64,000 nucleotides of DNA from Podarcis vaucheri (lineage: Eukaryota), in the NCBI GenBank assembly GCA_965113315.1, contig OZ220375.1. The stretch is one strand, 5' to 3'. Of the stretch, positions 647 to 63,653 are shown one piece after another. A program made the translations under genes and the position numbers. Position 1 is the stretch's first letter; each line of letters begins with the position of its first letter. The notes beneath the pieces are model-generated. The model did not search any database. It was not told where the DNA came from and was given only the letters and a program-made list of their open reading frames with translations.

Positions 647-2003
647 CTAAGTAACATCAGATAACATTAATGAATATTTAGGTTTGAATATGTGATTGAG
701 AAGTTACAGCCTGTTAGCTGTATTTAGATCAAACGTGATGAAATCAATGAACTTTTTATTATTATATTAACCTTCTATTGTTTTCTCTCCATGAAGTGCA
801 AGGTAATACACATTCTTCTCCCACTAGCTTCTATCCTCACCTTGTGAGGTTAGGATAAGGGGAAGCAAGGATTTGAAACTGGATTTCACTAGGCATGATG
901 TTCTAATCACTACTCCACTCTGGATTTCAATATTAACTTAAGCCCCATTGATTTTAAAAATCAAGCAATGGTTTCTGGTGTATATCTATGAAAGTTAAGC
1001 AACCCACCATAACTCTTTTTAACTATGTTATGAAACTAATAATGCTTTACTTGTAGGTTCTTTTCTAAAGTTTCGAACAGTGATTGGCCACTATGGCTCT
1101 ACTTATGTTATTGGACCACAAGTGCCATTACTCTTGACCATTGACCATGATGACAATGTATAGTGAGAGCTGGAGTCCAAAATCTGGTTTGCAGTATTAT
1201 TATTTTTCAAAAAAATTGCTGTTCTAGTAAAAAATCTGTAGCTTGATCATTTTCCTAGGCCTGTTTTACACATACTGAAGTTCTCTCAGGACGTTACTAG
1301 CCAGCTCATCCTTGCATGGCAAAGAGGAGGAACAAAATTTATAGTCACAAATATTTGACTAGAAATCCTGTCTACTAAGATGTACGTCCTACTGAACTTA
1401 GTGTGGCTTGCTCTGAAACATAGTGTTTATAGGATTACAATCTTAAAAGACTGGAAGCTGCTATGTTACCATAGATATACCAATCTAAAATGTAGAATCC
1501 AAAAAGAAGTTATTTAAATGATGATATCTGAATAACATAATTACATTACATGAGTTCAGAACAAAATGCATTATATCAATGAAGAGACATAGGGGACTCC
1601 AACAGGCATATTTTAGGGTTTGCAGAACAAATAACAGCTAGATTTTAGGGCCACTGTGAATGGGGTCAGGTGTGAAATGGCAAGTCCTAAATCTTAAGTC
1701 CACTAAGTGGGCTGCTGACAAGCCAAAAAGTAACATGTCCCACTACAATGACAACTCTTTCAGCTCTGCCTTAGCAGTTGTGGGTGCCTTAGCAGTTGTG
1801 GGATAGATCCCTCATTACATGATTCCAGTGTACAAGAGACTGGATTGGCTATTATATTTTCATACTCATTTTTAGATCTTTTACATTAAACTGACAGATT
1901 AATGCATTGAATTAAATGGACATTACAAAATCCTAAGCACTTTGTTTGGATTGTGTAGCAGAGCTCCAAATTGGTGCTAAAAGCTTTATTTCCATGGATC
2001 CTT

Positions 2004-2420
2004 ACCTTAACATCAGAACACATTAGATGATGAATCCCATAAAGTTCTGGATCAATCTACCTTTTCATTGTGGTATTCAGCACACATCTGCTCTCAAATG
2101 TAAATTGCATGGATGCCATCCTATTACCGACAATCCCTCAAAACATCCATCTAGAAAATGTCCTTGCATGTTTGACAATTCTCTGTTTATATTGAAAATA
2201 TGAATGTCTCTTCTTGGTTAATGTCATCCATTGCCAAATATATCTTATATAAAGTTATATAATGCACCTGAAAAGTCTCACTGATAAATGGAAAAAACAT
2301 TTCAAAATCATTTGGGAAATCACTGACTCCCCCCTGATCAGTGGGTTATCTTAATGATTGCAAATTCTCTGTAGTTTTCCCTCCCTGAGGTCAAGAGCTA
2401 TGAAGAAATTCACTAGAAAA
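2004..2420 (-). promoter_or_regulatory. Putative promoter and 5' non-coding exon of OR 1-646
   Basis: Donor TTAAG|GTAAG (GT 2005-2004). Paralogue-conserved blocks CTGAAAAGTCTCACTG (~2268) and ATCATTTGGGAAATC (~2307). Confidence 0.65.
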
Positions 2421-2874
2421 ATAATCCCTGCCAGTAAATCTTGCGTTCAGAACTCTATATGATTTTGTATATTTTTTCCACTTTTCCTTTATTTTGCAAG
2501 TTGCAAATCCATCTACCAGCACTGAGATCACCACTCAACCCAGGTTGTTATAATCAAGACAGTGAATACATTATAGTGTAATGCATGTTAGCAATTCATG
2601 AGAAACATGTCATGCCTGGAGCCTTGCTCATTCTTCTGCTTGCTTTTAATGAACTTCTTCACCATACCTAGCTTTGAGATGAGAAGTTAGCTTCACTAAC
2701 TTTGTCTTTTAAGTGCCTAAAGACTCTTTGCAATGTTTTCCTGAAAAAAGACTAACAGGCCTCTGCAAAATTAATTAACATTGAAATGGACACACAGGAA
2801 GGTAATTTATTTGTAAATATTTGTTAAACCATCATTTGATGGCTGATATATGAACTTTTACTGTGTGCTATAAT

Positions 2875-3233
2875 CAGTGCTTTTTTCTAGGGGTATGCAT
2901 ACCCCTAAACATTTTGTGAATCTTTGTACAGTGGACCCTCTGGATATGAATTAAATTTGTTCCGGGGTTCTGTCTGCAACCCGAAAAGTCCATAGGCAGA
3001 GGCGCCACTTCTGCGCATGCATGCATGGTGAAATCCTTAAGTATACGCTTCCCGGTTTGCTGCGTTTGTAACCCGAAAGTTACGTATCCAGAGCAGTATG
3101 TAACTAAAGGGTCCACTGTACTTTTGTCTATTTACGGTATTTATTTCCCTTAATTTGAACTATAAAATGGTGCTTTTCTTGAATCAAAATGAGAGTACCC
3201 CAAAACATTTTTTTAGGGGGGGGGGGAAATGCA
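2875..3233. mobile_element. Non-autonomous DNA element (CAGTGCTTTTT terminus, hAT-like) interrupted by a MITE
   Basis: The two halves join and align with the uninterrupted copy at ~35878-36005. Confidence 0.7.
2929..3118. mobile_element. Tc1/mariner (Tigger/pogo-like) MITE
   Basis: TIR CAGTGGACCCT...AGGGTCCACTG, TA on both sides. Confidence 0.88.
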
Positions 3234-37918: not shown

Positions 37919-38890
37919 TGAATAATGAAGGAAAAGATGAAAACTGAGACAGCAGTAATAATATTTTTCTTTAATAAATGTTGGAATGGATGAAAATGCA
38001 GAACTGGCTTAGCACTGCTTTTAAAATTGCCCCATGTGACAAAAGCAGCAGGAGAAATGAGACATATCTAAAGAGATTTATCATTGTTGGAAGTTAAAAG
38101 AAAGGTGCAAAAATTAGACACCTTTAAGGTCAACTGGTTCTTTTTCTAGTGGGAGAATTAATCACATTCTTACTTTTTAAAATTTCCCATGGAAATCAAG
38201 AGGTCTTTGAACTAATGTATGATGATGCTTATGAGTCCTGCTCTTAAGATCCAGAGTAGGAGAAAGCAGGAGAGACTGGGAAGACCTGCATTCAAACTCC
38301 TATGTATGCAGCCCCATTTGCAGGGACAATATTTTTTGGTTATTTCTTCAGGTGATGGTAATATGTGGAGCTTGTTTTGTTTTGCTTTGCTTTTAGAAGC
38401 ATAGTTTAGCCTCCTCTCTCAAGAAAAAGTAGTGGCTCTTTTCTGAGTCTGGAGAGCTAACATGTTTCTCCATAATGCCTCGTGTCTTTCAAGTAGAGAT
38501 ATTTCCCATTCTGCATCTGTAATGGAATTGTTTCAAACATGTTTTTAATACATTTATTAATTAATTAATTTTATTACTTATGTGTTTGTTGCCCTAGGTG
38601 CCTTTAGAAGGAAGGGTGGAATATCACAGCAGCAGCAGCAACAACAGCTAAGCTGTAGCACACTGCAGAGAATGTTGTTGTGCATCAGAGAATGTTGCTG
38701 TGCATCAGAATGTTGTTGTGCATCAGTACCATTCACATCATTGAGTTTTAAGCATTTAACTGTGCTTAAGACTCATTGCTTTGATTGCTCTTCTGAATGG
38801 TGAAATTGAAGGTCAACCCATAATATTTGCAATATTGTTTTCCTCTCTTATTTGCACCAGATTATATGTCTGAATATGTTTTACCCAAAG

Positions 38891-45269: not shown

Positions 45270-45381
45270 AAGTTTTTAAGGCTATCTGTCACGTACAATT
45301 TAGTTGAGATTCCTGCATTGCAGGGGGTTGGACTAGATGAGCCCTGAGGGCCCTTCCAACTCTACAATTCTATAATTCTAA
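45270..45381 (+). mobile_element. CR1 LINE 3' end fragment
   Basis: TTCCTGCATTGCAGGGGGTTGGACTAGATG...CCTTCCAACTCTACAATTCTAT. Similar minus-strand pieces at ~3500-3570, 11736-11818 and 55601-55665. Confidence 0.8.
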
Positions 45382-47221: not shown

Positions 47222-47593
47222 GTATGTGGCCTTTTACTCTCTTTTGAAATATATAAAATGCATGCAATATAGTACTTAACAATGCTTAGAATTACAAGGG
47301 TGCAAGGCTGCTGGAGGTGTGAGTTAGATGGAGAAATGGAAATTTGGCAGGTTGGATTTCTAATGCAGATATTGTAGCTCCATTAGGTGGAAACAGGAAA
47401 TCCATATTCCATTTGAGAAATGAAATTATCATTGTTGGAACTATAAACTCTTGCAAAAACTAGCCAGGTTAAAAGTTGACGCAGCTGAACAATTATCATA
47501 TGGAGAACAAAAGAAATGTGCTCCTTTTGAAGTGTTAAGATCCAAGATATAAAAACCATTCAATTTTGCCATGAACTTGTTTCTTTTTTACAG

Positions 47594-48571
47594 GTGCAGT
47601 TATATGAAAATAAACAACAGCTAAATCATACACGTGTAACTGAATTTATTCTTCTGGGCTTTGGAGATCACCACCAGCTACTGCTGATTCTTCTTTTCCT
47701 TTTGTTCCTTTTTATCTACATTGTGACGATGGCTGGGAACATCCTCATCATTTTACTAGTTGCCACTGACCGACACCTTCACACCCCAATGTACTTCTTC
47801 CTTGGGAACCTCTCATGCTTGGAGACCTTCTGCAGCTCAAACATCTTGCCAAGAATGTTATCCAGTTTCCTTACGGGAAGGAAAGTGATTTCAGTCAATG
47901 CATGTTTTGTGCAACATTACTTCTTTGGTTTTTTTGGAGGTGTGGAATGCTACTTATTATCAGCAATGTCCTATGACCGGTACTTAGCTATATGTAAACC
48001 TCTCCATTATGTCACCATGATGAATGGCAAATTGTGTTTCCAACTCATAGTCAGCTCTTGGTTTAGTGGTTTTCTATCAATTACTATGACAACGATTATC
48101 ATGTCCAAGTTAGTTTTCTGTGGTGACAATAAAATTGACCATTTCTTTTGTGACACCTTCCCCATCATAGAACTATTTTGTGGTGACACTAGCACGTTAA
48201 AGTGGTATATATATGTTTTATGCTCTGCATTCACCTTTCCCCCATCTATATTGACCTTCACATCATATACTTTCATAATTATAGCCATAATGAAAATCCC
48301 TTCTGCAACCGGAAAACAAAAAGCATTTTCTACCTGTTCCTCCCATCTCTTGGTAGTTACAATTTTCTATGGCACACTGATGGCTGTCTATGTGATTCCG
48401 AACACTGACAGACTGAATGCCCTTCACAAAGTCTTCTCTATCTGTTATACCATCTTGACTCCCATGATCAATCCCATCATATATAGTTTAAGAAATAAAG
48501 AAGTAAAGGAAGCATTGAGAAGACATATTTCATTCCTAGTAGTGCAAAATGAGAAGAAAAGACAGACTTAA
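47594..48571 (+). CDS. Olfactory receptor, main exon (begins with GTG after the acceptor)
   Basis: All OR motifs present, NHT sequon; no in-frame ATG until TM1. Confidence 0.93.
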   Translation: MQLYENKQQLNHTRVTEFILLGFGDHHQLLLILLFLLFLFIYIVTMAGNILIILLVATDRHLHTPMYFFLGNLSCLETFCSSNILPRMLSSFLTGRKVISVNACFVQHYFFGFFGGVECYLLSAMSYDRYLAICKPLHYVTMMNGKLCFQLIVSSWFSGFLSITMTTIIMSKLVFCGDNKIDHFFCDTFPIIELFCGDTSTLKWYIYVLCSAFTFPPSILTFTSYTFIIIAIMKIPSATGKQKAFSTCSSHLLVVTIFYGTLMAVYVIPNTDRLNALHKVFSICYTILTPMINPIIYSLRNKEVKEALRRHISFLVVQNEKKRQT

Positions 48572-49814
48572 GATTTGCTAAAGGTGTTCTTTTCTGAAAA
48601 GTGACTTCAAATTTTATAGCATCACTAAACATATATGTTTTCATTTTTATAGATAAATGTGCTCCTTTTTGTGCACATTAGAAAAACACACAAACACACT
48701 GAATGTGGAATGACAGAATCTGGACTAGTTCCATCCCAAATTTAGCAAATTTCTAGCCTCCTTCCACAGGCTGAATCTGGCTAGAGAACCTCAGAAATAC
48801 CTGGGTAGGCCTTGCTCTATATTTTCAGTCAGGAGAGAGGTACAAGTTTATAAGAAGCTACTTTTTCTTTCCCAGGAATCATGCATCTCTCTCACACAAC
48901 TAAACTTTGATGCTTTCACTTGGTTACTGCTAGATCAGAATGGTATGTGGGATTTTTCTAATCTTTTCTTCATTACCTTTTATCCTCCTGTTTTACCTTT
49001 CATTGTTGTCTTTTCCTCTCCCTCTCTCCCCTTGACCCCAAATCCTCTCCTGTCCTGGGAACTCAAGGTCTCTAACTTTTGCAATATTCCTACAAGATGC
49101 AGAGCTTTATATATATATGAAGTACATTTGTAATTGCTATGTAATCATATTGTAACAATGTTGTTGTTGATGACAATGATAACAGTAGTACAGTAGTCAC
49201 TCAATCATTTAATATTGATTTAGAACATGTATCTTGTTTTGATCACAATTTGTAGTTTTATTTTTGCAACAAGTTCACCTTTGGTGGGAATTAAGACTGA
49301 TTTTTTGGTGGGGTGTGCATGTGTGGTTTACCTTTTGTAGTTGTGGTATATATTTATCTTGGATTTAGTGTTTTGTTGAGTATTGTGTGTTCATTTTGTG
49401 TATTAATTTAGACTATTGGTGGCATTGAACAGGGGGAAATTAGCAACTTTAAAAAAATACAGGGCTGAAATGTACATCTTGCAGACTGAGGTGTCTGAAA
49501 ACAGATATGCTTTGCTTCCTTCCTGAAGAGATACAAAAATAGAGCAGATTTTTGTATCTCTTCAGGGAGATTCCACATCCACAGAGTAAATGTGGAAATG
49601 AATTATAATGATATCATAACTTCAGATGATATTGGCACATGGAACAAAGACTGTTGAATGTAAACAACAGTTGGGCGTATCTGGATAGAGGCAATCTGTC
49701 AGTTGTTTTAGTTTGGTTTGGCCTGTATCAAGCTTAAAACAAAAGAATTTACCACAGTTCACCTAGTTCTTCTGGGTGAAATTAGTTTTCTATCTACCTT
49801 GCAATTACTGAAGC

Positions 49815-50000
49815 ACCTGGGTAAATTCCCTCATGCCCCATATTCAGCTGAGGATCATCAGAATTATAGCAATGAAAGGATGTATTAAGAAAAAATGTTG
49901 CAGTGAAAGTGGCTAGGAGTACTTAAGTGAAGCTATAAATAAGACCACCCTTTGGCCTGACCTGACATTTCTACCTCAGATAGGTAGCTCCTAAGTGAGA
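49815..50000 (+). promoter_or_regulatory. Candidate V2R promoter
   Basis: TAAATTCCCTCATG 49822-49835, TATAAATA 49934-49941, donor-like ATAG|GTAG at ~49984. Confidence 0.35.
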
Positions 50001-50498
50001 TTGTGTTTTATAAGCAAGAGGGTTTATATTGAGATTATCTAGTTCATGTGTGGAATATGTTTTTCTAGCCTTCTCAAATCACTTCTTGACAAAATTCTTT
50101 GCATGTTCCATCTGGACCTCTGAGTTGGTCTTGAAATTTTATTTTTGGTGAAGCAGGTGGCAGCACAGAGGTATGAGGCACCTCTGAAAAAATATCCACT
50201 CATTTTAACCCTCCACCCTCTTCAAAATTCCTTGAATATTTCGCAGGAAACACCAAATTCATCTCAAACACCTTTCCCATTTGTGTCCAATTCAGAAGGC
50301 AGAAAGAGAGATAGATTGGAATGTATCTTCATTTGGAGGTTTTCTTCTATTACTTACTTCCTCAGTCTAGGCATGCATCAAAAATCCTTGTTCTTCCTCT
50401 CTCTTATTCAGTCATTCCTTTTTCTAAAGGCGTTACTTTCTTATCATAGCCCTGGGATACATGTGAAGGAAACATGCCCTGGCAGACCTTGTTCTGAA

Positions 50499-50716
50499 AT
50501 GCTCATGATGCTCTCTCTGGTATTCCTTTCGCTGCTGTTTCCAAATGTGGTAGGGAAGGAAACCCACTTTAAGTGTATACGTGAACACCGCTACCCAGAG
50601 GGATACCATAAAGATGGGGACTTCATTATTGGCGCACTTGTATCTCAGTTCCTTACATGGGACAAGCTAGAGGGATTCGATATTCAGCCTCCTCTTGCTT
50701 ACTCATTAGATCCATA
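50499..50716 (+). CDS. V2R exon 1 (signal peptide, [13 protein letters not shown])
   Basis: [19 protein letters not shown] hydrophobic leader; donor TA|GTAAGT (phase 2). The start is uncertain: there is another in-frame ATG at 50373. Confidence 0.85.
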
Positions 50717-53700
50717 GTAAGTCACTCTTCTTCCTTTAACTGTGTTAAAGTTGTTTCAAATATGTTGTGAAATGCTTCTTATAAAATAAAGAAAGTTCAT
50801 TTATTTCAATAAAGATGAATCGCTGTAAGGGTTTTGTTGTTGTTGTTTTTGGTGGGTATACAGACATGTTTCTTCATATTCTTCACACATACTTGAATAC
50901 ATATACAAAAATATTTAAATAAGGGCTAAACTGGGAAGATTTTTTTAAAAAACCTCTTCAGCAATTACATATATTTTCCCCAAACTACTCAATGATCACG
51001 CCAAACCAAGCTGGTATTTCTCTCCATTCCACACATTACGCAGAAGTAAACCTTGGTTTGCCTGTGAATGTTTACTCAACAGCTGCCAACAGTTGTGATT
51101 TCAATGGGGTGTACTTATGATCCAGTTCTATTTTGTTATGATTACTGTATTTTTTATAAGTGGTTTCTTGCAATTACTCTTGAAATTAAATTTTGCAGTG
51201 TGTGTGCATGTGTGGTGGTAATGGAATACTGCATCTTCTGTGCATTTACAGAATTAATTCTCATTGCAGTCCCTTGACTCGCAATTATCAACATGTTCTT
51301 GCCTTGGTCTATGCAGTAGAGGAGATAAACAAGAACCCCAATCTACTACCCAACATGACTCTGGGATTTCACACCCATGAAAACTATTTCAATGCAAGGA
51401 AAACATATGAATGTTCATTAAGTATCCTTTCAGGAAGAGGCAGAACAGTTCCGAACTACACCTGCAGGAAACAGAACAACTTAATAGCTGTTATTGGAGG
51501 GCTAAAGTCCATGTCATCCATTCAGATGTCAACTGTCTTAGGTTTATACAAGATACCACAGGTGTGTATATTGGGAGAGACTTTCATGATAGAACATTCA
51601 GACATCCAGATCTTCTTTTGGCATATTAGCGATATTAGACAGTTTATATGTGAGCGCGCTTTCACCACCAATAGGAAGGATGTTGGGATGTAAATTAATA
51701 TGGAAATGTGTGATACTTTGTTTGTGACTCTAAGTGAAAAGGGTACTTGTCTTCTTTCCCCCTCATTTTAGATCAGCTACGGATCATCTGATGAAGTATT
51801 GAGAAGTAAAACCCTTTTCCCATTTTTCTACCGGACTGTCTCAAATGAAGGTCTTCAGACCTTAGGAATAACCAAATTAGTTTTGCATTTTGATTGGACG
51901 TGGATTGGCCTCATAGCATCTTATAATGATCAAGGTGAAACCTTTGTCCTGAACTTGAAGAAGGAATTTGTCCAAAAGGGTGTGTGCATTGAATTTACAG
52001 AAATGCTTCCCAAAATGCTTGATAAAACTATGCATATAAAAAATAAAATAATTAAGTCATCCTCCAGTATCATTGTGGTGTATGGAGATACAGATTTCCT
52101 CATCTGGGTAAAGATAACTATTGAAAGTTCTGCAGTTTCAGGGAAGGTTTTAATCATCACATCCCAATGGGACTTCCTATCTAGTGTCTCTTATTTGCAT
52201 ATGGGATTTTCTTCCTTCAGTGGCACCTTGTCATTTGCTCTCCATAAACATGAAATTGTGGGATTTCGCCATTTTCTTCAGAACATAACCCTCAGCAAAT
52301 ACCCAGATGATGTCTTTCTGCCACATTTTTGGGGGGCTGCATTCAGCTGTTTCATTCCATCACTAGATTCAGGCAGCATGTTTTGGCAACTATGTACTGG
52401 AAATGAAAGGATTAAGGATTTGCCTAAGTACAAATTTGATTTGCAAACATTGGACTTGAGCTACAATATATACAAAGCTGTTTATGCCATCGCAAAATCT
52501 TTACATGAAATGTATTCATCCAGATACATCTCAACAAAGATGGAGAACAGATCAAGACCAAAGATGCATAAAATTAAGCCATGGAAGGTAGTAAGAATAT
52601 TTACTTTCTACTTATTTAAGGTTATGAGCAATTGCTGCTAGCTTCTGTTTCCACTAAAGAAAAGTATGTCTCAGGGTGGATCTGTGTTAACAAAGGAATA
52701 TTATTATTCAAGGTTTCCATTTGCTGAGAAATTGAAAGATGAATGACAGCAATGATGGTCTCCAGCTTAAAGAAGGGGCAACCAAATTTTCAGTTTTCCA
52801 AAAACCCACCTGTTCCCACCAATGAAACAATTCAGTTGCAGTTGCACTTTCTACTACTTGCTTTAGTGTGTTCTTGTTAGTCAGATTACTATTGTTCTTC
52901 AAACTGTTTTTCCAGTGGCGGCAATCGTGGCTCTGCGTGGCCATGGGAAAACCAGGGGTTCTCACCTGCATGACCACCAGCAGCAATAACAGCTTTTACC
53001 AGTAGCAGGGACTTCTGGGACATCTCTCCAAACTTCAGATTGGCCAATAGTGAGTGTGGTTTGGGAGATGAACATGAGGGAGCTAGTCTCCACTCAGATC
53101 CATCGCCGTTGCATAAATTCTTGCTGTGCTTTGAGTGGCCTTTGAGTTTGCTGTGGAATTAATCAGTTGCTGTATTAAGGGTCAGGGAGGAATTTGCCTG
53201 CAGACAAATTAAGCCTGTCTGGAGTTTTTGCCTACCTCATAGCAACAGTCACAACTTTTGGCAGAAAAGGCATTGGGTTGTGTCAGTGAAGCTCAGATGC
53301 TGACAGTAGAAGAAGAACCAGGCATAGACATAGAACAGTTAACTGCAGAAGACAGAGAGGAGGGGGAGAGCAGCTGTAATCTGAGCTCTGAACAAAGGGG
53401 AGACAAAAGACAGGGCCAAAGTGACAGGCGGCTGTGTGAGAGCTCAAATAGTGAGTTAGATGTTGGAATGCAGGAAGCATTCTCTCCCAAATCTCGCAGG
53501 ATCTCAAAAGTGGCTGAGATGTGTGAAAGATACTGGAAAAGAAGGTGGGGGTTTTCGTGCTGGGGAAGGGGGAGGAGCTCAGTCCGGGCAACTCCATCTT
53601 CTGGGGAGGATGATGAGTAGAGGAGCTCTGTTCTAATTTGTTGTTTTAGCAATAAATCTGAAATAATTAACAGCCAGAGTTGTCTCGCATTTGTGGGAGA

Positions 53701-56700
53701 GACCAAGCCATAACAGGTTGGATCCTTAGTCAAAACTGCAACAAAATGTTAAGGGTACTCTGGTAAAGGGGTCCATGATAAAAGTTTTGATGATTAGCCC
53801 CAGATAGGGGCTAATGGGAGATAAAACATCCCAAATCATGGCCTGCAATACTACTCTGTCCATGTGTTTCAATTAACTGGAGAGATCATGCTCATGGTCC
53901 CACAACTGGGGGTGGCTCATTGAGTGATTACAAAAGACAGGACCTTTCCAGTGGTGACCCTCGGTCTCTGGAATTCCATCCTTGAGGAAATATGGATAGT
54001 CTGTCATTGGTGGCATTTAGAAGCCAGTTAAAGTTTTATCCATTTGCTTGGGCCTTTAAGACCCAGTAGTTGAAAATGCTTGAAAACTTTTTCCAAGTTT
54101 GTGTTTTTAGAGTCTTAATAGTGTTATGAATGCTTTGTGATGATGTTTTTAATTACATTGTTCCCAACTTGGAGGACTTGCAGTATGCACATAAAAGCAA
54201 ATCATACATAAAAATAAAAGTATTACCCTTACTTCCCATTACAAAAACACACACCAGAAGAACCACATTGTCTTCAAAAATGACTTTAAAAATAACAATA
54301 GCTTGCATCCAGACTAAATTAGTTGTACTTAGTTCCCACCAAAATCAATAGGATTTAACATTAGTCATGATTAAAATATCACATAGATTTCACATAGATT
54401 TCATATTGACTCAAGTTTGGGTGTAATATTTGTCTTCCACATTTGAAATTAACCAAACAATTACTTTGGCTTGCCAGGTAACTTGGTTCAACAGCTGTGG
54501 ATCCATCACCGTGAAAGCCCTGCTCTGAGCACAAGAAGAGTCCATGTCTAAAAATGAAAGTGCCGAGAGTCAGGCTTCTGCAACATAGTTCATAGAATCA
54601 TAGAATAGAATAGAATAGAATAGAATCATAGAGTTGGAAGAGACCACAAGGGCCATCGAGTCCAACCCCCTCCCAAGCAGGAAACACCATCAGAGCACTC
54701 CTGACATATGGTTGTCAAGCCTCTGCTTAAAGACCTCCAAAGTAGGAGACTCCACCACACTCCTTGGCAGCAAATTCCACTGTCGAACAGCTCTTACTGT
54801 CAGGAAGTTCTTCCTAATGTTTAGGTGGAATCTTCTTTCTTGTAGTTTGGATCCATTGCTCCGTGTCCGCTTCATAACTTTATTACTCCAAGCATGTATA
54901 CAGAGGATGTCTGTACAGGTCTAATGTTTTTATTATTTGGGATATGAATGCAAAAATGCTATTGCAGTATATTAAAAAATGTTGCTTGCATTTGAGCAAA
55001 AAATACTGACCATTGTGCATTTCCTTCTTTTAATTGATCATGCTATGCAGCTGCATCCTTTTCTGAAGGAAGTCAGATATCATATTACTTCAACAGATGA
55101 TGTCTTTTTTGATGAGAGGGGGGAATCAACATCTGGATATGACATTCTCAATTGGTTTACCCTACCAAACGATACCTTAATTAACAGGAAAGTTGGTAGA
55201 GTCTACATGCACCATCCATCAATTGAACCATTTTTCTTTATAAATTCAACAAGAATTGTTTGGCAAAAGAATTTCAAGAAAGTAAGAATTGCTATGGGGT
55301 TGTTGTTGTGGGTTTTTTTGTTTTGTTTTTTATTTTAATCACTGATAATTAATATAATATACTACTATTCACTAGCAATTTCTCCCCCTACCACACTAAG
55401 TAGTAATTTCATACATCTTTACATCTTTTAAACTGAATGCAATTGTAGATGATAATCAGAAAATCTGTCTATTTCTGCTCCATCATACTTTTGCATTTCT
55501 TTAAAGTATATTCGCTCAAAATATGTATTTAAATATGGAAAAAAATATACACCTGCCCCATACTTTCTGTCTTGACTGACGTGAATCAGCAGGGCTTGAG
55601 ATAGAATCATAGAGTTGGAAGGGATTCCATGGGCCATCTAGTCAAACCCCCTGAAATGCAGGAATGCAGTGGTTTTAAACTCTGACTGAACATGGAGTCA
55701 GCAAGATGGGGGAAGGAGACACTGCATCTCCTTTTCTCCCTCTCAACCACATGTTTAATTAGGTTTTCAAGCCTATTTAAGTGTTAGGCCTCCCTAGGGC
55801 TTGGTTCCAGGATAAATCAGGGCTGATAGGAAGCCCTGGATCAGCCCCAAAATCAGAATGGGAGTCCTGTGTGCAGCTTCAATAAATGCACATTGCATTT
55901 GACCCATGGAAATGTCCACAAATATACAGATTCCCAGTAAAGTACAAAAGAATAAAAAATACATCTGCAGCCTTCATTTGAGCCATTTATTTTGTTTTCC
56001 CAGATATATAAAGTTCGCTTATATTCACAAAAAGCATATGGTCTTTCAGTAATCTCTTTCACATGCTGACATGAACCATTGCTTTCCCCCATCATTTTTG
56101 TGAATCTCTATTCTATTTTTTTCCTATATAAATAAAACATATTTTTATTAAAGATTTCTTGGTTTACAAAAGTACGTGCAATGTCTCTTTTTTCAAGTTA
56201 CATTTTCTACAGATCAGTTTCATTTGTTGAGACATTAGTGTTACCTGAGGAAAAAAAGGGGGAAAGAGGTGGAGGGGGGCATGTTGAGTGGGGGTGGGGT
56301 CGGGTGGCAATGTTTCTATTCTACTTAACATATGTGTGAGGTTTTGTGTCAGCGTTGCTTGTGTGGGTTTTCTTTACTCTTCGCTTGTGTTCCTTTGGTT
56401 GTGAGAGAGGTTGGGGTTGGCCTAAGGTGTGGTTGTTTGTTTGTGATTGGCTGTGGTGAACTTCGTTTTCATGTTGTTTTAGGTTCCACAATCTATCTGC
56501 ACCAAGAGCTGCCTTGAAGGTCAGCATAAGATAGCCATTGAAGGGAATCCTGTCTGTTGCTTTGCTTGTTCTCCATGCCCAGAAGGAACATTTTCTAACT
56601 ACAGAAGTAAGAGCTATGGAGAGATCATGTCTTGCAAAAACCTTAAATATAGTCAATGTCCTGTGAATTTCAGACCCACACATATAGCTCTGAAAAATCA

Positions 56701-58733
56701 GGAGTGACTTCGTTCTTTGCAAATGCTCTGTATGCAAATACTGTATGACATGTAAAGAAGGGTGTTTTTGTTTGTTTGTTTACAATTCATTCATTTTATC
56801 AGAAGGCATCATCATAACCTATTTGATTAGAAAGAAGTGGTCTCAGAATTTTATCTAGCCCAGCCTTCCCCAACCTCTTGCCCTCCAAATGTTCTAAACT
56901 ATAGCACCCATCACTCCCAGCCAGGATGATCCAAAACATTGGGAGGGCATGAGGTTGGGGAAGGGTGATCTAGTTAGTGAGTATAGGCCTTAAGATACTT
57001 GAAAGTGAGTTGGAGACATAGTTTCATGTCAGGCATAAAATCATTTATTTTGACTCACTGTTTCTGTTTCTGATGCAATAGAAAAGCCCAGCAAAACTGT
57101 TTACTTGATGTGACAGTGAAATGAGTGTGGTGCAAACTGCATGGGAAAAAATTTAATACTACCTTCAATGTCTAGCGGAGAGGACACCTATGATTTTTCT
57201 ACAGCCTGATTAAACAAACAAGTGCATATATTTTGTTGTATTAATCTCAGTGGAATCAATATACTAGTTTATCTTAAATTTAAGTCCTGGAGAGTTTAGT
57301 TGGCTTGTGGTTCATTCTCTAATGCAGGGAGGGCCAACCGAAGACCAATTCATGACCCAGCATACTTCTACTGCAGAAACATGGGGGTGGTTGGAACATG
57401 AGCTCTGGCCACTAAACCCCAGAGGGGACATATGGGTGCAGGAGAGATCAGAAGAAGCCCCAAGCTGCCAAACTCACACATTATGACATTTTTTAAAGAG
57501 GATGCTGGCACCAGTGCCACTGCTGCTACTAAGATAAGCAGATCCCCCTCATCTGAACAACTGAGTTTACTTTCCAACCTAAGGGAGATGGAGCTCAGTT
57601 TTCGGTGTGAATCCCAAAACTGGGCAAACAGTTTGTAACTACAGGAGGGAGACACATGCACCTTTAGAGAATATTATCAAACTATCAGGAGCTCACACTG
57701 CATGCCATGTCCGTTGCTGAGACTAAAATGGATTGTCTTTCCATCACTTCAGTTGGATGTCCTGGCTGCAAAACATCCCCCCCTCAATTTTAATGTTTCT
57801 TCCTTTCATTCAGATGCAGATCGTTGTGAGAAATGCCCAGAAGATCAGTACCCAAATCCAGATAAAACAAACTGCATTCCAAAGTCAGTCACATTTTTGT
57901 CATTTCATGAGCCTTTGGGGATTGGTTTGGCTGGGACAGCTGGTTCCCTTTTTCTTATCACAATTTTGGTGCTAGGGGTTTTTATTAAGAACCAGGATAC
58001 TCCCATTGTAAAAGCCAACAATCGGAATCTTACCTACACCCTTCTCGTTACCCTGATGCTCTGCTTTCTTTGTTCCTTCCTATTTATTGGTCAGCCTGGA
58101 AAAGTGACTTGCCTTCTCCGACAAACTACTTTTGGGATTATATTTTCTGCCTCTATTTCATGTGTCCTGGCAAAGACTGTCACTGTGGTTCTGGCTTTCA
58201 TGGCCACTAAGCCTGGAAATAAGATTAGGAAATGGAATGGAACAAAATTGACAAACTCCATCACTCTTTTCTGTACCCTTGCTCAAGTTATCATCTGTAT
58301 TGCCTGGCTTAAATCCTCTCCTCCATTCCCTGATTTTGACTTTGAATCTGAGGCTAATCACATAGTAATCCAGTGTAATGAAGGAGCTGCCCATATGTTC
58401 TACACAGTCCTTGGTTACATGGCCTTTCTTGCTATTGTAAGCTTCTCTGTAGCTTTTCTAGCCAGGAAGCTGCCAGACATTTTCAATGAAGCCAAGTTCA
58501 TCACCTTCAGCATGCTGATTTTTTGCAGCATTTGGATCTCATTTATTCCCACATATTTCAGCACTAAAGGGAAGTTTATGGTGGCTGTGGAGGTCTTCTC
58601 CATTTTAGCCTCCAGTGCAGGCTTGCTGGGGTGCATCTTCTTCCCCAAAGTCTACATTATTGTCATGAGGCCTGACCAGAACACCAAAAGGAAGTTACTA
58701 AAGAAATCAAATGCTGGAACAAATGAGTTATAA
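50499..58733 (+). CDS. Vomeronasal type-2 receptor (V2R, class C GPCR), complete six-exon gene, 866 aa
   Basis: join(50499-50716,51270-51561,51772-52587,55051-55281,56483-56606,57814-58733) = 2601 nt. All introns are GT-AG and the frame stays open. Encodes a signal peptide, Venus-flytrap domain, Cys-rich domain and class C 7TM. Confidence 0.94.
51270..51561 (+). CDS. V2R exon 2 (292 nt)
   Basis: ttgcag|T...CAG|gtgtgt; [29 protein letters not shown]...LYKIPQ. Confidence 0.93.
51772..52587 (+). CDS. V2R exon 3 (816 nt)
   Basis: ttttag|ATC...AAG|gtagta; ISYG...FPFFYRTV...HFDWTWIGL...[14 protein letters not shown]...KPWK. Confidence 0.93.
53281..53715 (+). mobile_element. Solo LTR (435 bp) in V2R intron 3
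   Basis: TGT...ACA ends, perfect 5-bp TSD GGTTG (53276-53280 / 53716-53720), AATAAA at 53651. Confidence 0.88.
53900..54215 (+). mobile_element. L2-like LINE 3' fragment (old)
   Basis: GACAGGACCTTTCCAGTGGTGACCCTCGGTCTCTGGAATTCC resembles the L2 ORF2 end (RAFSVVAPxLWNSLP); A-rich tail. Confidence 0.5.
54591..54870 (-). mobile_element. CR1 LINE 3' end in V2R intron 3
   Basis: [45 protein letters not shown]; (ATTCT)n tail; TTCATA at both junctions. Confidence 0.92.
55051..55281 (+). CDS. V2R exon 4 (231 nt)
   Basis: atgcag|CTG...AAA|gtaaga; LHPFLKEV...FFDERGE...GYDILNW...KVGR. Confidence 0.92.
56141..56470 (-). mobile_element. Possible L1-like 3' UTR fragment in V2R intron 4
   Basis: Begins TTTTTATTAAAG (AATAAA plus A-tail on the minus strand); G/T-skewed body unlike the flanks. 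Confidence 0.35.
56483..56606 (+). CDS. V2R exon 5 (124 nt, Cys-rich domain; not in the ORF track)
   Basis: ttttag|GTT...A|gtaaga; [41 protein letters not shown]. Confidence 0.93.
56861..56967. mobile_element. hAT/Charlie-type MITE
   Basis: CAGCCTTCCCCAACCT...AGGTTGGGGAAGGGTG termini; flanks ATCTAGCC / ATCTAGTT. Confidence 0.8.
57814..58733 (+). CDS. V2R exon 6 (7TM domain)
   Basis: attcag|AT; [11 protein letters not shown]...TPIVKANN...[20 protein letters not shown]...[11 protein letters not shown]...FFPK. AATAAA at 58735-58740 just after the stop. Confidence 0.96.
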
Positions 58734-59160
58734 GAATAAAAGACTCTTTTGCTCTTAAATTCCTAGCAAGGAAAGAAGGACTCTTGGAAAACATGTCCAA
58801 AAAAATCATCATTATGTGCCATCATTCCCATAGTCATTCAGATCAAGTAGTGCAGTAGAGTACAGCCCCCAGCAACCCAAATGCTTCTTCATATTTTGGA
58901 GCAAAGGAAAAGAATATGCAAAACCACTTAATCTAATGACAAAGGTATCTTTGTCATTTTCAGAAATGTATCCCATTCACCTACCATTTCTTGCCAAAAA
59001 GAAAAGCCAGACTAATATTTCTGGTGAAAACTATCATGAAGGTAAGGCCATAGAGAGGATGCATAACAAAAACAACTTTAATACAAATTGTTATGAAGTG
59101 AGAAACAACTGACACAAGCACACAGTGCCTGAGAGATGATACAGGTAGTTCCTGGTCAAT

Positions 59161-59178
59161 ATGATGATGATGATGATG

Positions 59179-59225
<47 letters not shown>
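59161..59225. repeat. Compound (ATG)n(ATA)n microsatellite, probably a LINE tail
   Basis: Seen directly; followed by TTATACACCACCTATCTGGCTGGGTTTCCCCAGCCA. Confidence 0.95.
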
Positions 59226-59470
59226 TTATACACCACCTATCTGGCTGGGTTTCCCCAGCCATGCTACAACTTGTGTGCCTAAATATTTGCTTTGTATTCT
59301 AGAACCTTCTCAACAAGTGTAAATAAAGAGTGTAAATAAAGAGGTCATAAGGGATAAACTAAGTCTCTGTTGTTCTCTCCTCTGATGGAAACTGATGCCA
59401 AGATGGTGCAGGAAATGTGGTCTTTTCAGTCCCACCTAAGAACTCTTTCAGATACCTGCAGCAGAGAACA

Positions 59471-59472
<2 letters not shown>

Positions 59473-59517
<45 letters not shown>
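59473..59517. repeat. (GT)n microsatellite
   Basis: Seen directly. Confidence 0.97.
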
Positions 59518-59518
<1 letters not shown>

Positions 59519-60018
59519 ACATGCACACACACCATTCCATGTAAAGAAGTCAACTGCATAGACAGTTGAATATTTAATAATGGCTATAAGCTAGCAGCTT
59601 CTAAGACACCTCAAGGCAGCAGGATAATTTGGGCTCAGTAGCACACACAACTCTGTCCTTGAACACCACTTCCTGTCTCTCAGTATCTGCCACTTGATGC
59701 AGAGGCCTCAGTCTGCCTAACATCCCTGAAAGAATGACACTTTTGACTACATGCAAAAAGAGGCAGCAGAGTAGTAGAAGTTATCTTACAATTTGGGTAC
59801 CATTTTGTGTAGCAAATTGGTCTTAGTTTAGCACATATAGAATTAAATGAAATGGTTAATCCTAGTGAGATATGTTTCAAAATACACTCCACTACATGAA
59901 CCCTAGAAGTTGCAGTCATGCCCCAGCTGCCTAAAGCTTCTGCACCACAGTATTTCCACCTCATTAGTGTTTTCAGATCAATTTCAAATTCAGACTGAAT
60001 TCTTTGGGAAGGTGGCCA

Positions 60019-60408
60019 TGTTAGTAATGCCAAATCCAGATGGCAATACCCTCAAACATAGTGCCCAGTGATGGCACACACATGAAAGCAGTGGATGGTT
60101 GGTGGAAGGACCCTGAGTGAGAAGTGGGGAAGAGAAGATATCCCAGAGTGAGAGACTGGGAGGAGATGAAGAGTTCCTAGAGAGCTGGGAGGGTCCACCA
60201 CTTTCTGTGCATGACAAGGGTTAAGTACTGCCTTTGAGAGAGGTCTCTGTGTTTTCTCTCTCTCTTCCTTTCTCTGTTTTGTTTAGATTAGTTTCTTTTA
60301 TCTTACTGTATTATGAATTAGCTTTAATAAAATATTATGAGAAAAAGAAGAAGACAGAATTCAACTTGCTTCTTAATGGCTTCCGGGACAAAAGAACTGG
60401 CTATGACA
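60019..60408 (+). mobile_element. Possible solo LTR
   Basis: TGT...ACA candidate ends, purine-rich body and AATAAA (~60325) as in 53281-53715; no TSD found. Confidence 0.4.
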
Positions 60409-60449
60409 TATATTCAGGATAGGCATATGTGAAAGACCAACTTCACTCA

Positions 60450-60678
60450 TATTTTTATTTTCTTTATTATTACATTTAAATTTCACATTTCCTCCAAGAA
60501 GTTTAAGGTCGCAAACATAGAACTCTCTCTTCCCATTTTACGCTCAAACCAACCCTGAGCTAGATTAGGTCAAGAGAAAGCATTTGGCTCAAGGTCACCC
60601 ACTTCATTGCTGAGCTGGGATTTGAACCCTGTCTTCCAGGACCTAGTCCAATACTTTAACCACTACACCACACTGGTT
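60450..60678 (-). mobile_element. tRNA-derived SINE (MIR/CORE-like)
   Basis: GGGATTTGAACCC (B box, reverse) and AACCACTACACCACACTGG (A box, reverse); CAACCCTG..AGATTAGG..CAAGGTCACCCA core. Related decayed copy at ~750-925. Confidence 0.65.
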
Positions 60679-62162
60679 CTCATATGTATCCCATAAGAGC
60701 CTGCTTGCTTATTAAAATAATCAATGGAGACTCTCTTATGCCTGATCTAAATTTATTTACTATGCATATATTATTTAAACAAAAATACTGATGCTAGCTT
60801 TGGGAATTCTGGGTCTTCCACTTTGGGATTTCTGGATGTCTGCAAATAGACCCTAATAATTCCCTCTCTTCATACTCTTACCTTAATTAATTCCCTAGTG
60901 TGTTGAATGTAAACAGATTTGTGGTTGTCATCACAGTAGAGTAGTCCACAAACCTCCATGCATGACAGTTTCATAAGGATATAATGTTGCCTGTTGAGTG
61001 CAGCTCATTTTTCGTCCTGTAAAATTATTCATTTTTTGTTTCTAGAAAGAAAGAAGTGTAACCATGGTTGTTGGGGTACTGTTGTTGCAAATGTGATCTG
61101 GATCATTGTGACTAAATTCATAAGGTGATTTTATTTGAAGTTCTTTGTTCACATTTGATTAGCCGCCCATGCAGGAACTACAAGGAGCAAAGCTGGCTGC
61201 TTGATGGTGCCCAACAACTGGATTCTACTTGAATCTCAAGACAGGGTAACAAATAAAAATGGAGACAGCTTGTTTCACTCTAAGAGGTTGTAGACTCTGC
61301 TCGTTAGACTGTAGTGTAGGTTGTGAGGATGTAAAGTAAAAGCCTTAATGTAGCACGAAGGAGAGATATGATACAGCATCTTCAGATAAGATATTCATGA
61401 TAATTTGGCCTAAAAGCAAAACATGCCATCGCATTATAATAATGAAATCACCATTGCCTTTTAAATATGTTGCTAAACTTGAATGAATTTGCCAATTTTA
61501 GATGACTGGGCAAATGCTTACCAAATTGAAACAGAAGATCTTTAAATAATGCTACGAAATGCTCATTCGTCTTTGCATTTGACATGAGATTGACCTGAAA
61601 GACCATACTCATGTAATATGAGAAAAACATAAATAGAAGAGAAATGTGGTTACATGTAGCACTTGAAATGGCACTTAAGTGGCACTTAAGATCCAATAAG
61701 CTTTACTTACTCTTATTGCACATGTGTTAGTGCTATCTGAGTGCAGTACTGTCAATTTCCATAGGCAACTAGATTGTTTAAATTGCTTCTGACAGAGACA
61801 AATAAGGAACAACAAACGGAAGTCATGAACAATGGGTTTAATTAAACTGAGTTTTACTCAGAATAGACCTGCTGAAATGAATGAACATGAATAAGTCCAT
61901 TCATTTCAGTGGGTCTTCTCTGAGTAAATATTTGCTTATTTCATAAAAGGTAATCTGTACAACTTCATTTTTTTTATTTTTTTGCAAACAAGTAAGTTTC
62001 AAAGTACCAGTAATATTTGTTAAAAATCTACACTGACGTGACCTGTGTCTCACCTATAAAATAATTAGAGAAAAGTATGTTTCCTCTTCTAGAAGCTGTG
62101 TGGTATTATACTTCACTATATATACTTATCTGGACTCTTTAGGACTTCTCAGGAGACATGTG

Positions 62163-62398
62163 CAGTGGAACCTCGGGTTGTGAACGTGATCCATGCGGGA
62201 GGCATATTCACAACCCGCAGCGCCGCATCTACGCACTCGTGAGTCGTGATTCAGCACTTCTGCACATGCACAAAGCACGATGTAGTACTTCTGCACATGC
62301 GTGAGCGCCGAAACCCAGAAGTAACCCATTCTGGGTTCAGCGCGGTGCACAACCTGAAAATACATAACCTGAAGAGTCTGGAACCCGAGGTACCACTG
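62163..62398. mobile_element. Tc1/mariner MITE
   Basis: CAGTGGAACCTCGGGTT...AACCCGAGGTACCACTG-TA; same family as 15904-16163. Confidence 0.88.
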
Positions 62399-62708
62399 TA
62401 TATGGCTACATTTAGTCTGTTCATGGTATCCAAAGAATAGCAGAAAACCAAAGAGATTTATGTTTTATAGAAAAAAACCAAACTTCATCAGAAAACAATA
62501 AATAATCTGCTCCTTTCATCTGCTGAACCAAGGAACTTGCTTATTAAAAGAATGATCTCCACATTCACACACTTGTGCACATGCACATAAAAACTCAGAG
62601 TGTAGTCATACTTGTATATTAAATGGTATGTATCAGATTTGAACGATGAAACCTCTATTTCTACCTATTGCCTTTTGCAGTTCCTTGAAATACCCTGAGG
62701 ATAATTTC

Positions 62709-63653
62709 ATGGATAATAAACAATGGAACAATCAAACAATGGTCAAAGAATTCATCCTCCTTGGATTTGGAAATATACATTCATTTCAGCTCCTTTTCCT
62801 GGTATTTCTAGTGATTTACCTTGTGACCATGTTGGGAAACCTTTTGATTGTTATCTTAGTTGCAGCTGATCAACACCTACACACTCCCATGTACTTTTTC
62901 CTCGCAAATTTGTCTTCTTTAGAGTCATGCTACATCTCAACTATTTTGCCCAGAATGCTGAACAGTTTCATAACTGGGAACCAGTCTATGTCTGTGAATT
63001 CTTGTTTCATGCAACTGTATTTCTTTGGGGCCTTGGCTACTGCAGAATGCTATCTGCTTGCTGCTATGTCTTACGATCGGTATCTAGCAATCTGCAAACC
63101 ATTGCATTATATGACCATTATGAATGCCAGGTTCTCCCTGCAACTTTCAAGTGGTTCTTGGGTCATTGGATTCATCGTTAATACTTTAACGACCTCTTCA
63201 ATGATGCACTTAATATTCTGTGGACCTAATGAAATCGACCACTTCTTCTGTGATTTTGCACCATTACTTCAACTGTCTTGTAACGATACCCTGAAAATAC
63301 AGCTGCTGATTTTTGTTCTGTCAGCTCTGTTTGGATTGGTGCCATTTCTTTTAACACTTATTTCCTACAGCTGCATCATAAAAACCATTCTGAGGATCCC
63401 ATCCACTTTAGGAAGGAAGAAAGCATTTTCCACCTGCTCATCACACCTCATTGTGGTTACACTCTTTTATGGCACTATAGTCATTGTATACGTGTTACCA
63501 AAAACCAGAACACTTAGAGACCTTAACAAGGTCTGCTCTGTCTTCTACACTGTCTTAACACCCTTGGTGAATCCTTTCGTTTACAGCCTGAGAAATAAAG
63601 ACATTAAACAAGCGTTAAGGAAAGCTGCGAGATATTTTGTCGATAGATCATAA
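62709..63653 (+). CDS. Olfactory receptor, ~314 aa
   Basis: OR motifs present. An acceptor-like ttttgcag ends at 62680, so ATG 62709 (MDNKQWNNQT) is preferred over ATG 62646. Confidence 0.95.
   Translation: MDNKQWNNQTMVKEFILLGFGNIHSFQLLFLVFLVIYLVTMLGNLLIVILVAADQHLHTPMYFFLANLSSLESCYISTILPRMLNSFITGNQSMSVNSCFMQLYFFGALATAECYLLAAMSYDRYLAICKPLHYMTIMNARFSLQLSSGSWVIGFIVNTLTTSSMMHLIFCGPNEIDHFFCDFAPLLQLSCNDTLKIQLLIFVLSALFGLVPFLLTLISYSCIIKTILRIPSTLGRKKAFSTCSSHLIVVTLFYGTIVIVYVLPKTRTLRDLNKVCSVFYTVLTPLVNPFVYSLRNKDIKQALRKAARYFVDRS

What the first reader, a model, noticed from the sequence alone, without database searches (positions are those of the whole stretch)
50499..58733. A lone, intact V2R gene embedded inside an OR tandem array
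Seen: six exons splice into an open 866-aa class C receptor, co-oriented with intact ORs 1.9 kb upstream and 4 kb downstream. No other V2R fragment was recognised in the 64 kb. Established: ORs (class A, main olfactory epithelium) and V2Rs (class C, vomeronasal) are unrelated families that typically sit in their own tandem clusters, and OR clusters are under cluster-wide silencing and single-gene choice. Inference: this V2R moved in as genomic DNA (introns retained, so not a retrocopy). It stayed open despite several intronic insertions and may be exposed to OR-type regulation.
Basis: partly seen in the sequence, partly recalled or inferred. Interest (0 to 1): 0.8.

Follow-up and report, generated by a model that had tools for sequence, protein, structure and literature searches.

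The report
Old single-copy V2R inside OR array
A complete vomeronasal-type (class C) smell receptor gene really does sit alone between ordinary odorant receptor genes in this wall-lizard-like genome, but it belongs to an old receptor lineage already partly annotated in other lizards, and nothing yet shows it is regulated unusually.

Summary
Six GT-AG exons (50499-58733, + strand) join into 2601 nt, giving 866 codons and one terminal stop. The domains are those of a V2R: ligand-binding flytrap, nine-cysteine domain and class C seven-helix domain. No other V2R piece lies in the 64 kb. Open OR reading frames lie 1.9 kb upstream and 3.9 kb downstream on the same strand, though the upstream OR starts with GTG, not ATG.

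The OR-to-V2R join is not an assembly error on the upstream side. Contigs from two other samples bridge it.

The gene is not a recent arrival by sequence. It is 97-99% identical in exon 6 to partial models in Lacerta agilis and Podarcis muralis (Zootoca and P. raffonei share their 90% clusters). It is 76% identical to single genes in a cordylid and a gecko, and at most 71% to every other V2R. The five form a clade with full support.

The flanking ORs are old paralogues (59-63% identity). Unchecked scan notes report another lone V2R in a second OR cluster and a V2R 0.72 Mb away.

Expression is unknown. All public orthologue models omit exon 4.

Verdict: a real, ordinary V2R gene in a mildly unusual place. 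"Moved in" and "OR-type regulation" remain untested.

The parts
50499..50716 (+). V2R exon 1 (start codon, signal peptide, start of the flytrap domain)
   Evidence: ATG at 50499 and GTAAGT donor after 50716. 96% identical to the Zootoca model P0238 and 67-68% to the Hemicordylus and Gekko orthologues.
51270..51561 (+). V2R exon 2 (flytrap domain)
   Evidence: Pfam ANF_receptor 3.9e-10. The CAG acceptor at 51270 keeps the frame; the alternative acceptor at 51252 gives a stop.
51772..52587 (+). V2R exon 3 (main part of the flytrap domain)
   Evidence: Pfam ANF_receptor 9.7e-23. CaSR residues 165-458 at 3.9e-34. 65-66% identical over its whole length to Hemicordylus P0121 and Gekko P0122.
52108..52113 (+). 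Cryptic donor TGG|GTAAAG inside exon 3, used by all public lacertid gene models to jump to exon 5
   Evidence: Models P0001, P0239 and P0238 run ...DFLIWV and go straight on into exon 5 (VPQSI); P0241 aligns to ...DFLIW, then takes in the intron-3 repeat before exon 5. Sequence read.
53140..53500 (.). High-copy interspersed repeat in intron 3
   Evidence: Summed contig depth is 1100-3200 here against 20-60 elsewhere in three DNA runs, with many loose ends. The P. raffonei model P0241 takes 53243-53464 as an exon.
55051..55281 (+). V2R exon 4 (end of the flytrap domain)
   Evidence: 77 open codons with CAG/GTAAGA splice sites. Aligns to CaSR 466-531, E 2.5e-4. 46-50% identical to exon 4 of turtle V2Rs. 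Absent from every public orthologue model.
56483..56606 (+). V2R exon 5 (124 nt, nine-cysteine domain)
   Evidence: Pfam NCD3G 1e-14, above the curated cut-off.
57814..58733 (+). V2R exon 6 (end of the cysteine-rich domain, seven helices, short tail, stop)
   Evidence: Pfam 7tm_3 1.5e-84 over the full profile. CaSR 1.4e-85. 99.0% identical to P. muralis P0001, 97.4% to L. agilis P0002, 76% to P0121 and P0122, and at most 70.6% to all others. A polyadenylation hexamer lies at 58735.
47594..48571 (+). Upstream OR reading frame (325 codons, GTG at the start position)
   Evidence: Pfam 7tm_4 1.3e-53. No in-frame ATG before the first helix.
62646..63653 (+). Downstream OR gene (335 codons)
   Evidence: Pfam 7tm_4 5e-52.

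Best explanation
This is an intact gene for a tetrapod-type V2R of the A/B/D kind, a class C receptor with a flytrap domain, a cysteine-rich domain and seven helices. It belongs to a distinct, old V2R lineage that appears as one gene per annotated species. The lineage is present in lacertids, a cordylid and a gecko, so it was already present in early squamates. The gene is a long-standing resident of an old, diverged part of an OR array on a chromosome rich in chemoreceptor genes, not a recent insert and not an assembly error. By inference from what is known of the family, it is most likely chosen and expressed like other squamate A/B/D-type V2Rs. That means vomeronasal sensory neurons together with the single family C co-receptor, binding a non-volatile ligand through the flytrap domain. 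Shown here: the gene structure, domains, open frame, orthologues, the clade, and the upstream join in other samples. Inferred: the tissue of expression, the ligand type, and the age of the placement.
For: Six-exon open model of 866 codons. All three defining domains are present, and exon 4 is colinear with CaSR. The nearest proteins are all annotated V2R '26-like'. Exon 6 is 99.0% and 97.4% identical to the P. muralis and L. agilis models, 76% to one Hemicordylus and one Gekko japonicus protein, and at most 70.6% to every other V2R. The P. muralis and L. agilis models also stand for 90% clusters that hold the Zootoca and P. raffonei models. Over full length the Hemicordylus protein is 71% identical to the Gekko protein and at most 52% to the rest. 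In an 88-row tree of the seven-helix domain, the window, P. muralis, L. agilis, Hemicordylus and Gekko form a clade with SH-aLRT 100 on a stem of 0.27. Independent contigs bridge the upstream OR and V2R exon 1: X3 record 9 covers 47500-50941 and X13 record 1 covers 47500-50561. No listed indel falls in exons 1-3 in three other samples. The ORs around the gene are only 59-63% identical to each other, against 76-94% for the young tandem copies on the other strand. Squamate A/B/D-type V2Rs are expressed one per neuron in the vomeronasal organ together with a single family C gene (PMC3590772). Tetrapod-type V2Rs are scattered over several chromosomes (PMC9018814).
Against: There is no expression evidence. 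The one RNA run laid, of unknown tissue and from another species, put no reads on the gene. No public model of this gene is full length. The four lacertid annotations splice from inside exon 3 to exon 5, and the cordylid and gecko models skip exon 4. The 866-residue product is therefore a prediction, and a shortened or defective transcript cannot be excluded. The downstream join (58733-62646) was not checked with reads. No orthologue was found in the snakes, skink, anguimorphs, iguanians, amphisbaenian or other geckos returned by the searches, so the lineage has been lost or left unannotated often.
Confidence: 0.65

Rival explanations
1. One reading: the V2R was moved as genomic DNA from a V2R cluster into an existing OR array. 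It now sits under OR-cluster silencing and one-gene choice, possibly with expression in main olfactory neurons.
For: It is the only V2R sequence in 64 kb of ORs, on the same strand as four ORs, and it keeps its introns. There is precedent for V2Rs outside the vomeronasal organ: earlier-diverging Xenopus v2rs are expressed only in the main olfactory epithelium (PMC4986728).
Against: Nothing marks a transfer. No flanking duplication or paralogous intergenic sequence is interrupted. The lineage has no close paralogue in any V2R cluster, with every other V2R at most 70.6% identical in exon 6. The neighbouring ORs are old paralogues. No expression data exist. The only exact O/E palindrome in the window lies at 27351, far from this gene.
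Confidence: 0.12
2. The gene is a dying or already non-functional locus. The frame is still open in this genome, but the real transcripts skip the second half of exon 3 and exon 4, giving a receptor without a complete flytrap domain.
For: All five public lacertid models (P. muralis twice, Zootoca, P. raffonei, L. agilis) lack exon 3b and exon 4, and the cordylid and gecko models lack exon 4. The lineage is missing from the annotations of most squamate families searched. Repeats have entered the introns.
Against: 866 codons remain open over six exons with canonical splice sites. Exon 3b is 65-66% identical to the cordylid and gecko proteins. Exon 4 still matches turtle V2Rs at 46-50% and CaSR at the right residues, which neutral sequence would not do over that span of time. 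No listed indel falls in exons 1-3 in three other samples. Of four listed differences in exon 1, two are silent and one is conservative. Gene models for divergent multi-exon receptors are often incomplete.
Confidence: 0.15
3. An assembly mis-join has placed a V2R contig inside an OR array.
For: None was found. The downstream junction was not tested with reads.
Against: The window has no N. Contigs assembled from other samples run without a break from the OR through the 1.9-kb spacer into V2R exon 1 (X3, X13). All three DNA runs cover 47500-53140 throughout at single-copy depth; X3 and X13 tile it with overlapping contigs.
Confidence: 0.02

Closest known systems
Squamate A/B/D-type V2Rs (annotated 'vomeronasal type-2 receptor 26-like'), as described by Brykczynska et al. 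2013 (PMC3590772)
   Same: It has the same three-domain architecture, the same six-exon plan with a 124-nt cysteine-rich exon, and 62-71% identity in the seven-helix domain.
   Different: It appears as one gene per annotated species with orthologue-level matches in a cordylid and a gecko, instead of belonging to a species-specific expansion. It lies among ORs rather than among other V2Rs.
Partial public models of the same gene: XP_028560101.1/.2 (Podarcis muralis), XP_053218584.1 (P. raffonei), XP_034957526.1 (Zootoca vivipara), XP_033024572.1 (Lacerta agilis)
   Same: They represent the same locus by sequence, with 94-100% identity in the shared exons.
   Different: They are 352-626 residues long. 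None contains exon 3b or exon 4, and one contains a piece of the intron-3 repeat. The window supports a full 866-codon model.
XP_053120527.1 (Hemicordylus capensis) and XP_015265476.1 (Gekko japonicus)
   Same: They are orthologue-level relatives: 76% identity in exon 6, 65-66% in exon 3, and a clade with SH-aLRT 100.
   Different: Their models (787 and 779 residues) go from exon 3 straight to exon 5. Their genomic neighbours are unknown.
Calcium-sensing receptor (nearest solved structures, e.g. 7dd5, 5k5s)
   Same: It is colinear over the flytrap, cysteine-rich and seven-helix parts, with E values of 1e-85 and 1e-34.
   Different: It is much less similar to CaSR than to V2Rs (290 bits against 376-490 for V2R paralogues and orthologues in exon 6). 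It has a short tail and a V2R exon plan, so it is not a CaSR orthologue.
Family C V2R (V2R2 / Vmn2r1-type co-receptor), single-copy in anole and snakes
   Same: It is single-copy, old, and lies apart from the large V2R clusters. The rattlesnake's type-1-like V2R is also an isolated gene (PMC12400810).
   Different: Its orthologues are named '26-like', not '1-like', by similarity. In the tree its clade lies inside the squamate A/B/D-type radiation. No family C sequence was available here for a direct test.

Membership tests
V2R / OlfC (class C chemosensory GPCR) | N-terminal Venus-flytrap ligand-binding domain (Pfam ANF_receptor) | tested here: met
   Exon 2 gives 3.9e-10 and exon 3 gives 9.7e-23. 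Exon 4 aligns to CaSR 466-531.
V2R / OlfC (class C chemosensory GPCR) | Nine-cysteine domain between the flytrap and the helices (Pfam NCD3G) | tested here: met
   Exon 5 gives 1e-14 at 54.5 bits, against a cut-off of 38.9.
V2R / OlfC (class C chemosensory GPCR) | Class C seven-helix domain (Pfam 7tm_3) | tested here: met
   Exon 6 gives 1.5e-84 over profile positions 1-251 of 251.
V2R / OlfC (class C chemosensory GPCR) | Closer to V2Rs than to CaSR, GPRC6A, T1R or mGluR | tested here: met
   The top 120 of 5631 hits are V2R models. Exon 6 scores 376-490 bits against V2Rs and 290 bits against CaSR, 154 against mGluR2 and 110 against T1R2. No CaSR or T1R outgroup was in the tree.
V2R / OlfC (class C chemosensory GPCR) | Six coding exons with a long exon 3, a 124-nt exon 5 and the helices in the last exon | tested here: met
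   Exon sizes are 218, 292, 816, 231, 124 and 920 nt, all introns GT-AG.
V2R / OlfC (class C chemosensory GPCR) | Expression in vomeronasal (or microvillous olfactory) sensory neurons | not testable with these tools
   No vomeronasal or olfactory RNA run was on offer. One RNA run of unknown tissue laid no reads on the gene.
Family C V2R co-receptor (V2R2 / Vmn2r1 type) | Orthology to Vmn2r1 / V2R2 and placement outside the A/B/D radiation | tested here: inconclusive
   The orthologues are named '26-like', and the clade lies inside the squamate A/B/D-type radiation. No family C sequence was in the data set. The evidence leans towards not a member.
Processed retrocopy | Loss of introns | tested here: not met
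   Five introns are retained at the canonical V2R positions.

The most novel reading that the evidence does not exclude
An ancient V2R lineage, one gene per annotated species and kept since early squamates, has always lived inside an OR array. It is chosen there by the OR machinery and expressed in main olfactory rather than vomeronasal neurons, as the early-diverging v2rs of Xenopus are. That would be a natural case of a class C receptor under OR-cluster control in an amniote.
Probability: 0.08. Interest if true: 0.7.

Novelty: new member of a known kind. Interest (0 to 1): 0.3.

Why it matters
If the placement proves old and the gene is expressed, it offers a natural test. The question is whether receptor choice follows the gene's own promoter or the chromatin of the cluster it sits in. 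As it stands, the practical value is smaller:

- The full six-exon model corrects the shortened public models of this gene in four lacertid species.
- It identifies a rare V2R lineage with orthologue-level relatives in a cordylid and a gecko, in a family otherwise known for species-specific expansions.

Tried and rejected
**Synteny in other species.** The neighbours of the Lacerta, Podarcis, Hemicordylus and Gekko orthologues therefore stay unknown.

**Joined protein.** The spliced 866-residue protein was not sent to any search or folding tool. Searches were made exon by exon by reference. The exons were joined only inside a script, to count length and stops.

**High-scoring hits that looked like special relatives.** Thamnophis, Tiliqua, Microcaecilia and Sminthopsis models scored well. 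They turned out to be chimeric models that carry a second piece of the seven-helix domain, so they were rejected as orthologues.

**Self-comparison of the window.** Comparing 48.6-62.6 kb with the rest of the window gave only short repeat fragments. It showed no interrupted OR tandem unit and no target-site duplication, so the limits of any insertion cannot be drawn.

**O/E-type palindrome.** TCCCNNGGGA occurs once in the window, at 27351, which is no more than chance and far from this gene.

**RNA run X23.** Its only reads fell partly on the intron-3 repeat. This is uninformative.

**Literature.** Seven searches found no paper that describes a V2R inside an OR array in lizards. The nearest is the rattlesnake chromosome Z array (PMC12400810).

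**Codon-level dN/dS.** This could not be run, because no orthologue DNA was on hand.

**The search of earlier findings by place.** It does not accept coordinates outside the window.
Full report
**Observation.** The window holds eleven OR reading frames. Seven lie on the minus strand between 4.1 and 33.2 kb. Four lie on the plus strand at 38852, 42134, 47594 and 62646.

Between the last two lies a six-exon gene on the plus strand: 50499-50716, 51270-51561, 51772-52587, 55051-55281, 56483-56606 and 57814-58733. All introns are GT-AG. The exons add up to 2601 nt, which is 866 codons and one terminal stop. The alternative acceptor for exon 2, at 51252, introduces a stop. I joined the exons only inside a script, to count length and stops. 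The joined protein was not printed, searched or folded, and all searches were made exon by exon by reference.

The domains are those of a V2R:
- Pfam finds ANF_receptor on exons 2 and 3, and 7tm_3 on exon 6 over the whole profile at 1.5e-84.
- Pfam finds NCD3G on exon 5 at 1e-14.
- Exon 4 has no Pfam hit on its own. It aligns to CaSR residues 466-531, exactly between the part matched by exon 3 (165-458) and the cysteine-rich domain.

tblastn of all six exon peptides against the window returns only the exons themselves, so there is no second V2R fragment. The gaps to the flanking ORs are 1927 and 3912 bp.

The upstream OR is open for 325 codons, but it has GTG where its paralogues have ATG. It has no in-frame ATG before the first helix, and an acceptor-like ttttttacag lies directly in front.

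**Is the join real?** The window has no N. I laid Logan contigs of three DNA runs on 47500-53499. The runs came from another sample of the same organism label and from two close species.
- In run X3 a single 4337-bp contig covers 47500-50941.
- In run X13 a 3967-bp contig covers 47500-50561.
- Both contigs run from the OR through the spacer into V2R exon 1.
- All three runs cover 47500-53140 throughout at single-copy depth; X3 and X13 tile it with overlapping contigs. No listed indel falls in V2R exons 1-3.

A mis-join on the upstream side is therefore excluded.

**What is it?** The nearest proteins are all V2R models named '26-like'. Exon 6 compares as follows:

| Compared protein | Identity in exon 6 |
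|---|---|
| Podarcis muralis model P0001 | 99.0% |
| Lacerta agilis model P0002 | 97.4% |
| Hemicordylus capensis P0121 | 76% |
| Gekko japonicus P0122 | 76% |
| All other V2Rs returned | at most 70.6% |

The window therefore comes from a Podarcis-like lacertid. The 90% clusters add Zootoca vivipara and P. raffonei models of the same gene.

Over full length, the Hemicordylus protein is 71% identical to the Gekko protein and at most 52% to anything else. In a tree of 88 seven-helix domains, the window, P. muralis, L. agilis, Hemicordylus and Gekko form a clade with SH-aLRT 100 on a stem of 0.27. That clade lies inside the squamate radiation of A/B/D-type V2Rs (quick IQ-TREE search, rooted on amphibian and marsupial V2Rs, with no CaSR or family C row available).

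Some hits scored higher than their identity warranted (Thamnophis, Tiliqua, a caecilian, a marsupial). These are chimeric models with a second seven-helix piece.

The gene is thus a distinct, old V2R lineage that appears as one gene per annotated species. Because geckos branch near the base of squamates, the lineage was present in early squamates. It was not found in the snake, skink, anguimorph, iguanian, amphisbaenian or other gecko annotations returned by the searches.

**The gene model against public models.** No public model is full length. The lacertid models are 352-626 residues long. Three of them (P. muralis twice, Zootoca) leave exon 3 at a cryptic donor (TGG|GTAAAG at 52108) and go straight to exon 5. 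The P. raffonei model leaves exon 3 at about the same point and takes in 53243-53464 of the intron-3 repeat before exon 5. The L. agilis model holds only exons 5 and 6. The Hemicordylus and Gekko models contain all of exon 3 but skip exon 4.

Three points argue that exon 3b and exon 4 are real coding sequence:
- Exon 3b is 65-66% identical to the cordylid and gecko proteins.
- Exon 4 is 46-50% identical to exon 4 of turtle V2Rs and colinear with CaSR.
- Both are open, with canonical splice sites.

That is not what sequence left unused for this long would look like. Still, the full product is a prediction. A shortened transcript, or a lesion in the other species, cannot be excluded without their DNA or without RNA.

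**Context.** The four plus-strand ORs around the V2R are only 59-63% identical to each other. The minus-strand ORs are young tandem copies at 76-94%. So the V2R sits in the old part of the array. A self-comparison of the spacers and introns shows only short repeat fragments and no interrupted OR unit. Intron 3 carries a high-copy repeat at about 53140-53500.

Notes of this scan, which I did not check, report the following in the same genome:
- a V2R 0.72 Mb upstream, near a stretch noted as an OR cluster;
- V2R clusters 12-18 Mb away on the same piece;
- a second 'lone, intact V2R' inside another OR cluster on another piece.

In the literature:
- Tetrapod-type V2Rs are described as scattered over several chromosomes (PMC9018814).
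- The rattlesnake has a large gene array on chromosome Z, shown in a figure colour-coded for ORs and V2Rs. Its Z-linked V2Rs branch near the base of the V2R tree (PMC12400810).
- Squamates have one family C V2R, co-expressed with one A/B/D-type V2R per vomeronasal neuron (PMC3590772).
- I found no paper describing a V2R inside a lizard OR array.

**Mechanism.** The best-supported reading is an ordinary ligand-binding V2R that has long resided among ORs. By family knowledge it would be expressed in vomeronasal neurons.

No RNA run from the nose was on offer. The one RNA run laid gave no reads on the gene. The one exact O/E-type palindrome in the window is far from the gene.

That idea is not excluded either. 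Early-diverging Xenopus v2rs are expressed only in the main olfactory epithelium (PMC4986728).

**What could not be done.** That is the decisive test of how old the placement is. No orthologue DNA was available for dN/dS.

**Verdict.** The claims of 'moved in' and 'OR-type regulation' are untested. This is a new member of a known kind and of modest interest.

Noticed in passing
window 47594-48571 (+): The OR upstream of the V2R has GTG where its paralogues have the start ATG. It has no in-frame ATG before the first helix, and a strong acceptor-like ttttttacag lies directly in front. Either the start codon was lost or it lies in an upstream exon.
   Followed up: partly
window 52108 (+), and proteins P0001, P0239, P0241, P0238: The public lacertid models that include exon 3 leave it at or just before a cryptic donor TGG|GTAAAG. 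Three go straight on to exon 5, dropping about 237 codons of the flytrap domain; the P. raffonei model inserts a repeat-derived exon first. This may be a real alternative splice, a shared lesion, or an annotation habit passed from one species to the next.
   Followed up: partly
proteins P0121 (Hemicordylus) and P0122 (Gekko) against window 55051-55281: Both distant orthologue models go from exon 3 straight to exon 5 and lack the 77-codon exon 4. In the window that exon is open and conserved.
   Followed up: partly
window 53140-53500 (intron 3): A high-copy interspersed repeat, with summed contig depth above 1000 in three DNA runs. The P. raffonei gene model takes 53243-53464 of it as a coding exon. 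RNA reads of run X23 touch only this repeat.
   Followed up: partly
window 4099-33217 (-) against 38852-63653 (+): The array has two parts. The minus-strand part holds seven young tandem ORs: five at 76-82% identity, plus a pair at 94% to each other that is about 60% identical to those five. The plus-strand part holds four old ORs at 59-63% identity. The orientation switches between 33.2 and 38.9 kb.
   Followed up: partly
window 54620-54683, 55601-55664, 45310-45373: Three copies of a 64-bp repeat fragment at 81-83% identity. Two lie in V2R introns 3 and 4 and one lies between ORs. This is probably a SINE-like element.
   Followed up: no
window about 59160-59200: An (ATG)n/(ATA)n microsatellite lies 0.45 kb downstream of the V2R stop. 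It produces the spurious poly-Y/poly-H reading frame at 58981-59262 on the minus strand.
   Followed up: no
window 48204 (inside the upstream OR), run X4: In one close species, about half of the contig depth carries a 2-bp insertion (GT) inside the OR reading frame. This could be a frameshift allele or a paralogue.
   Followed up: no
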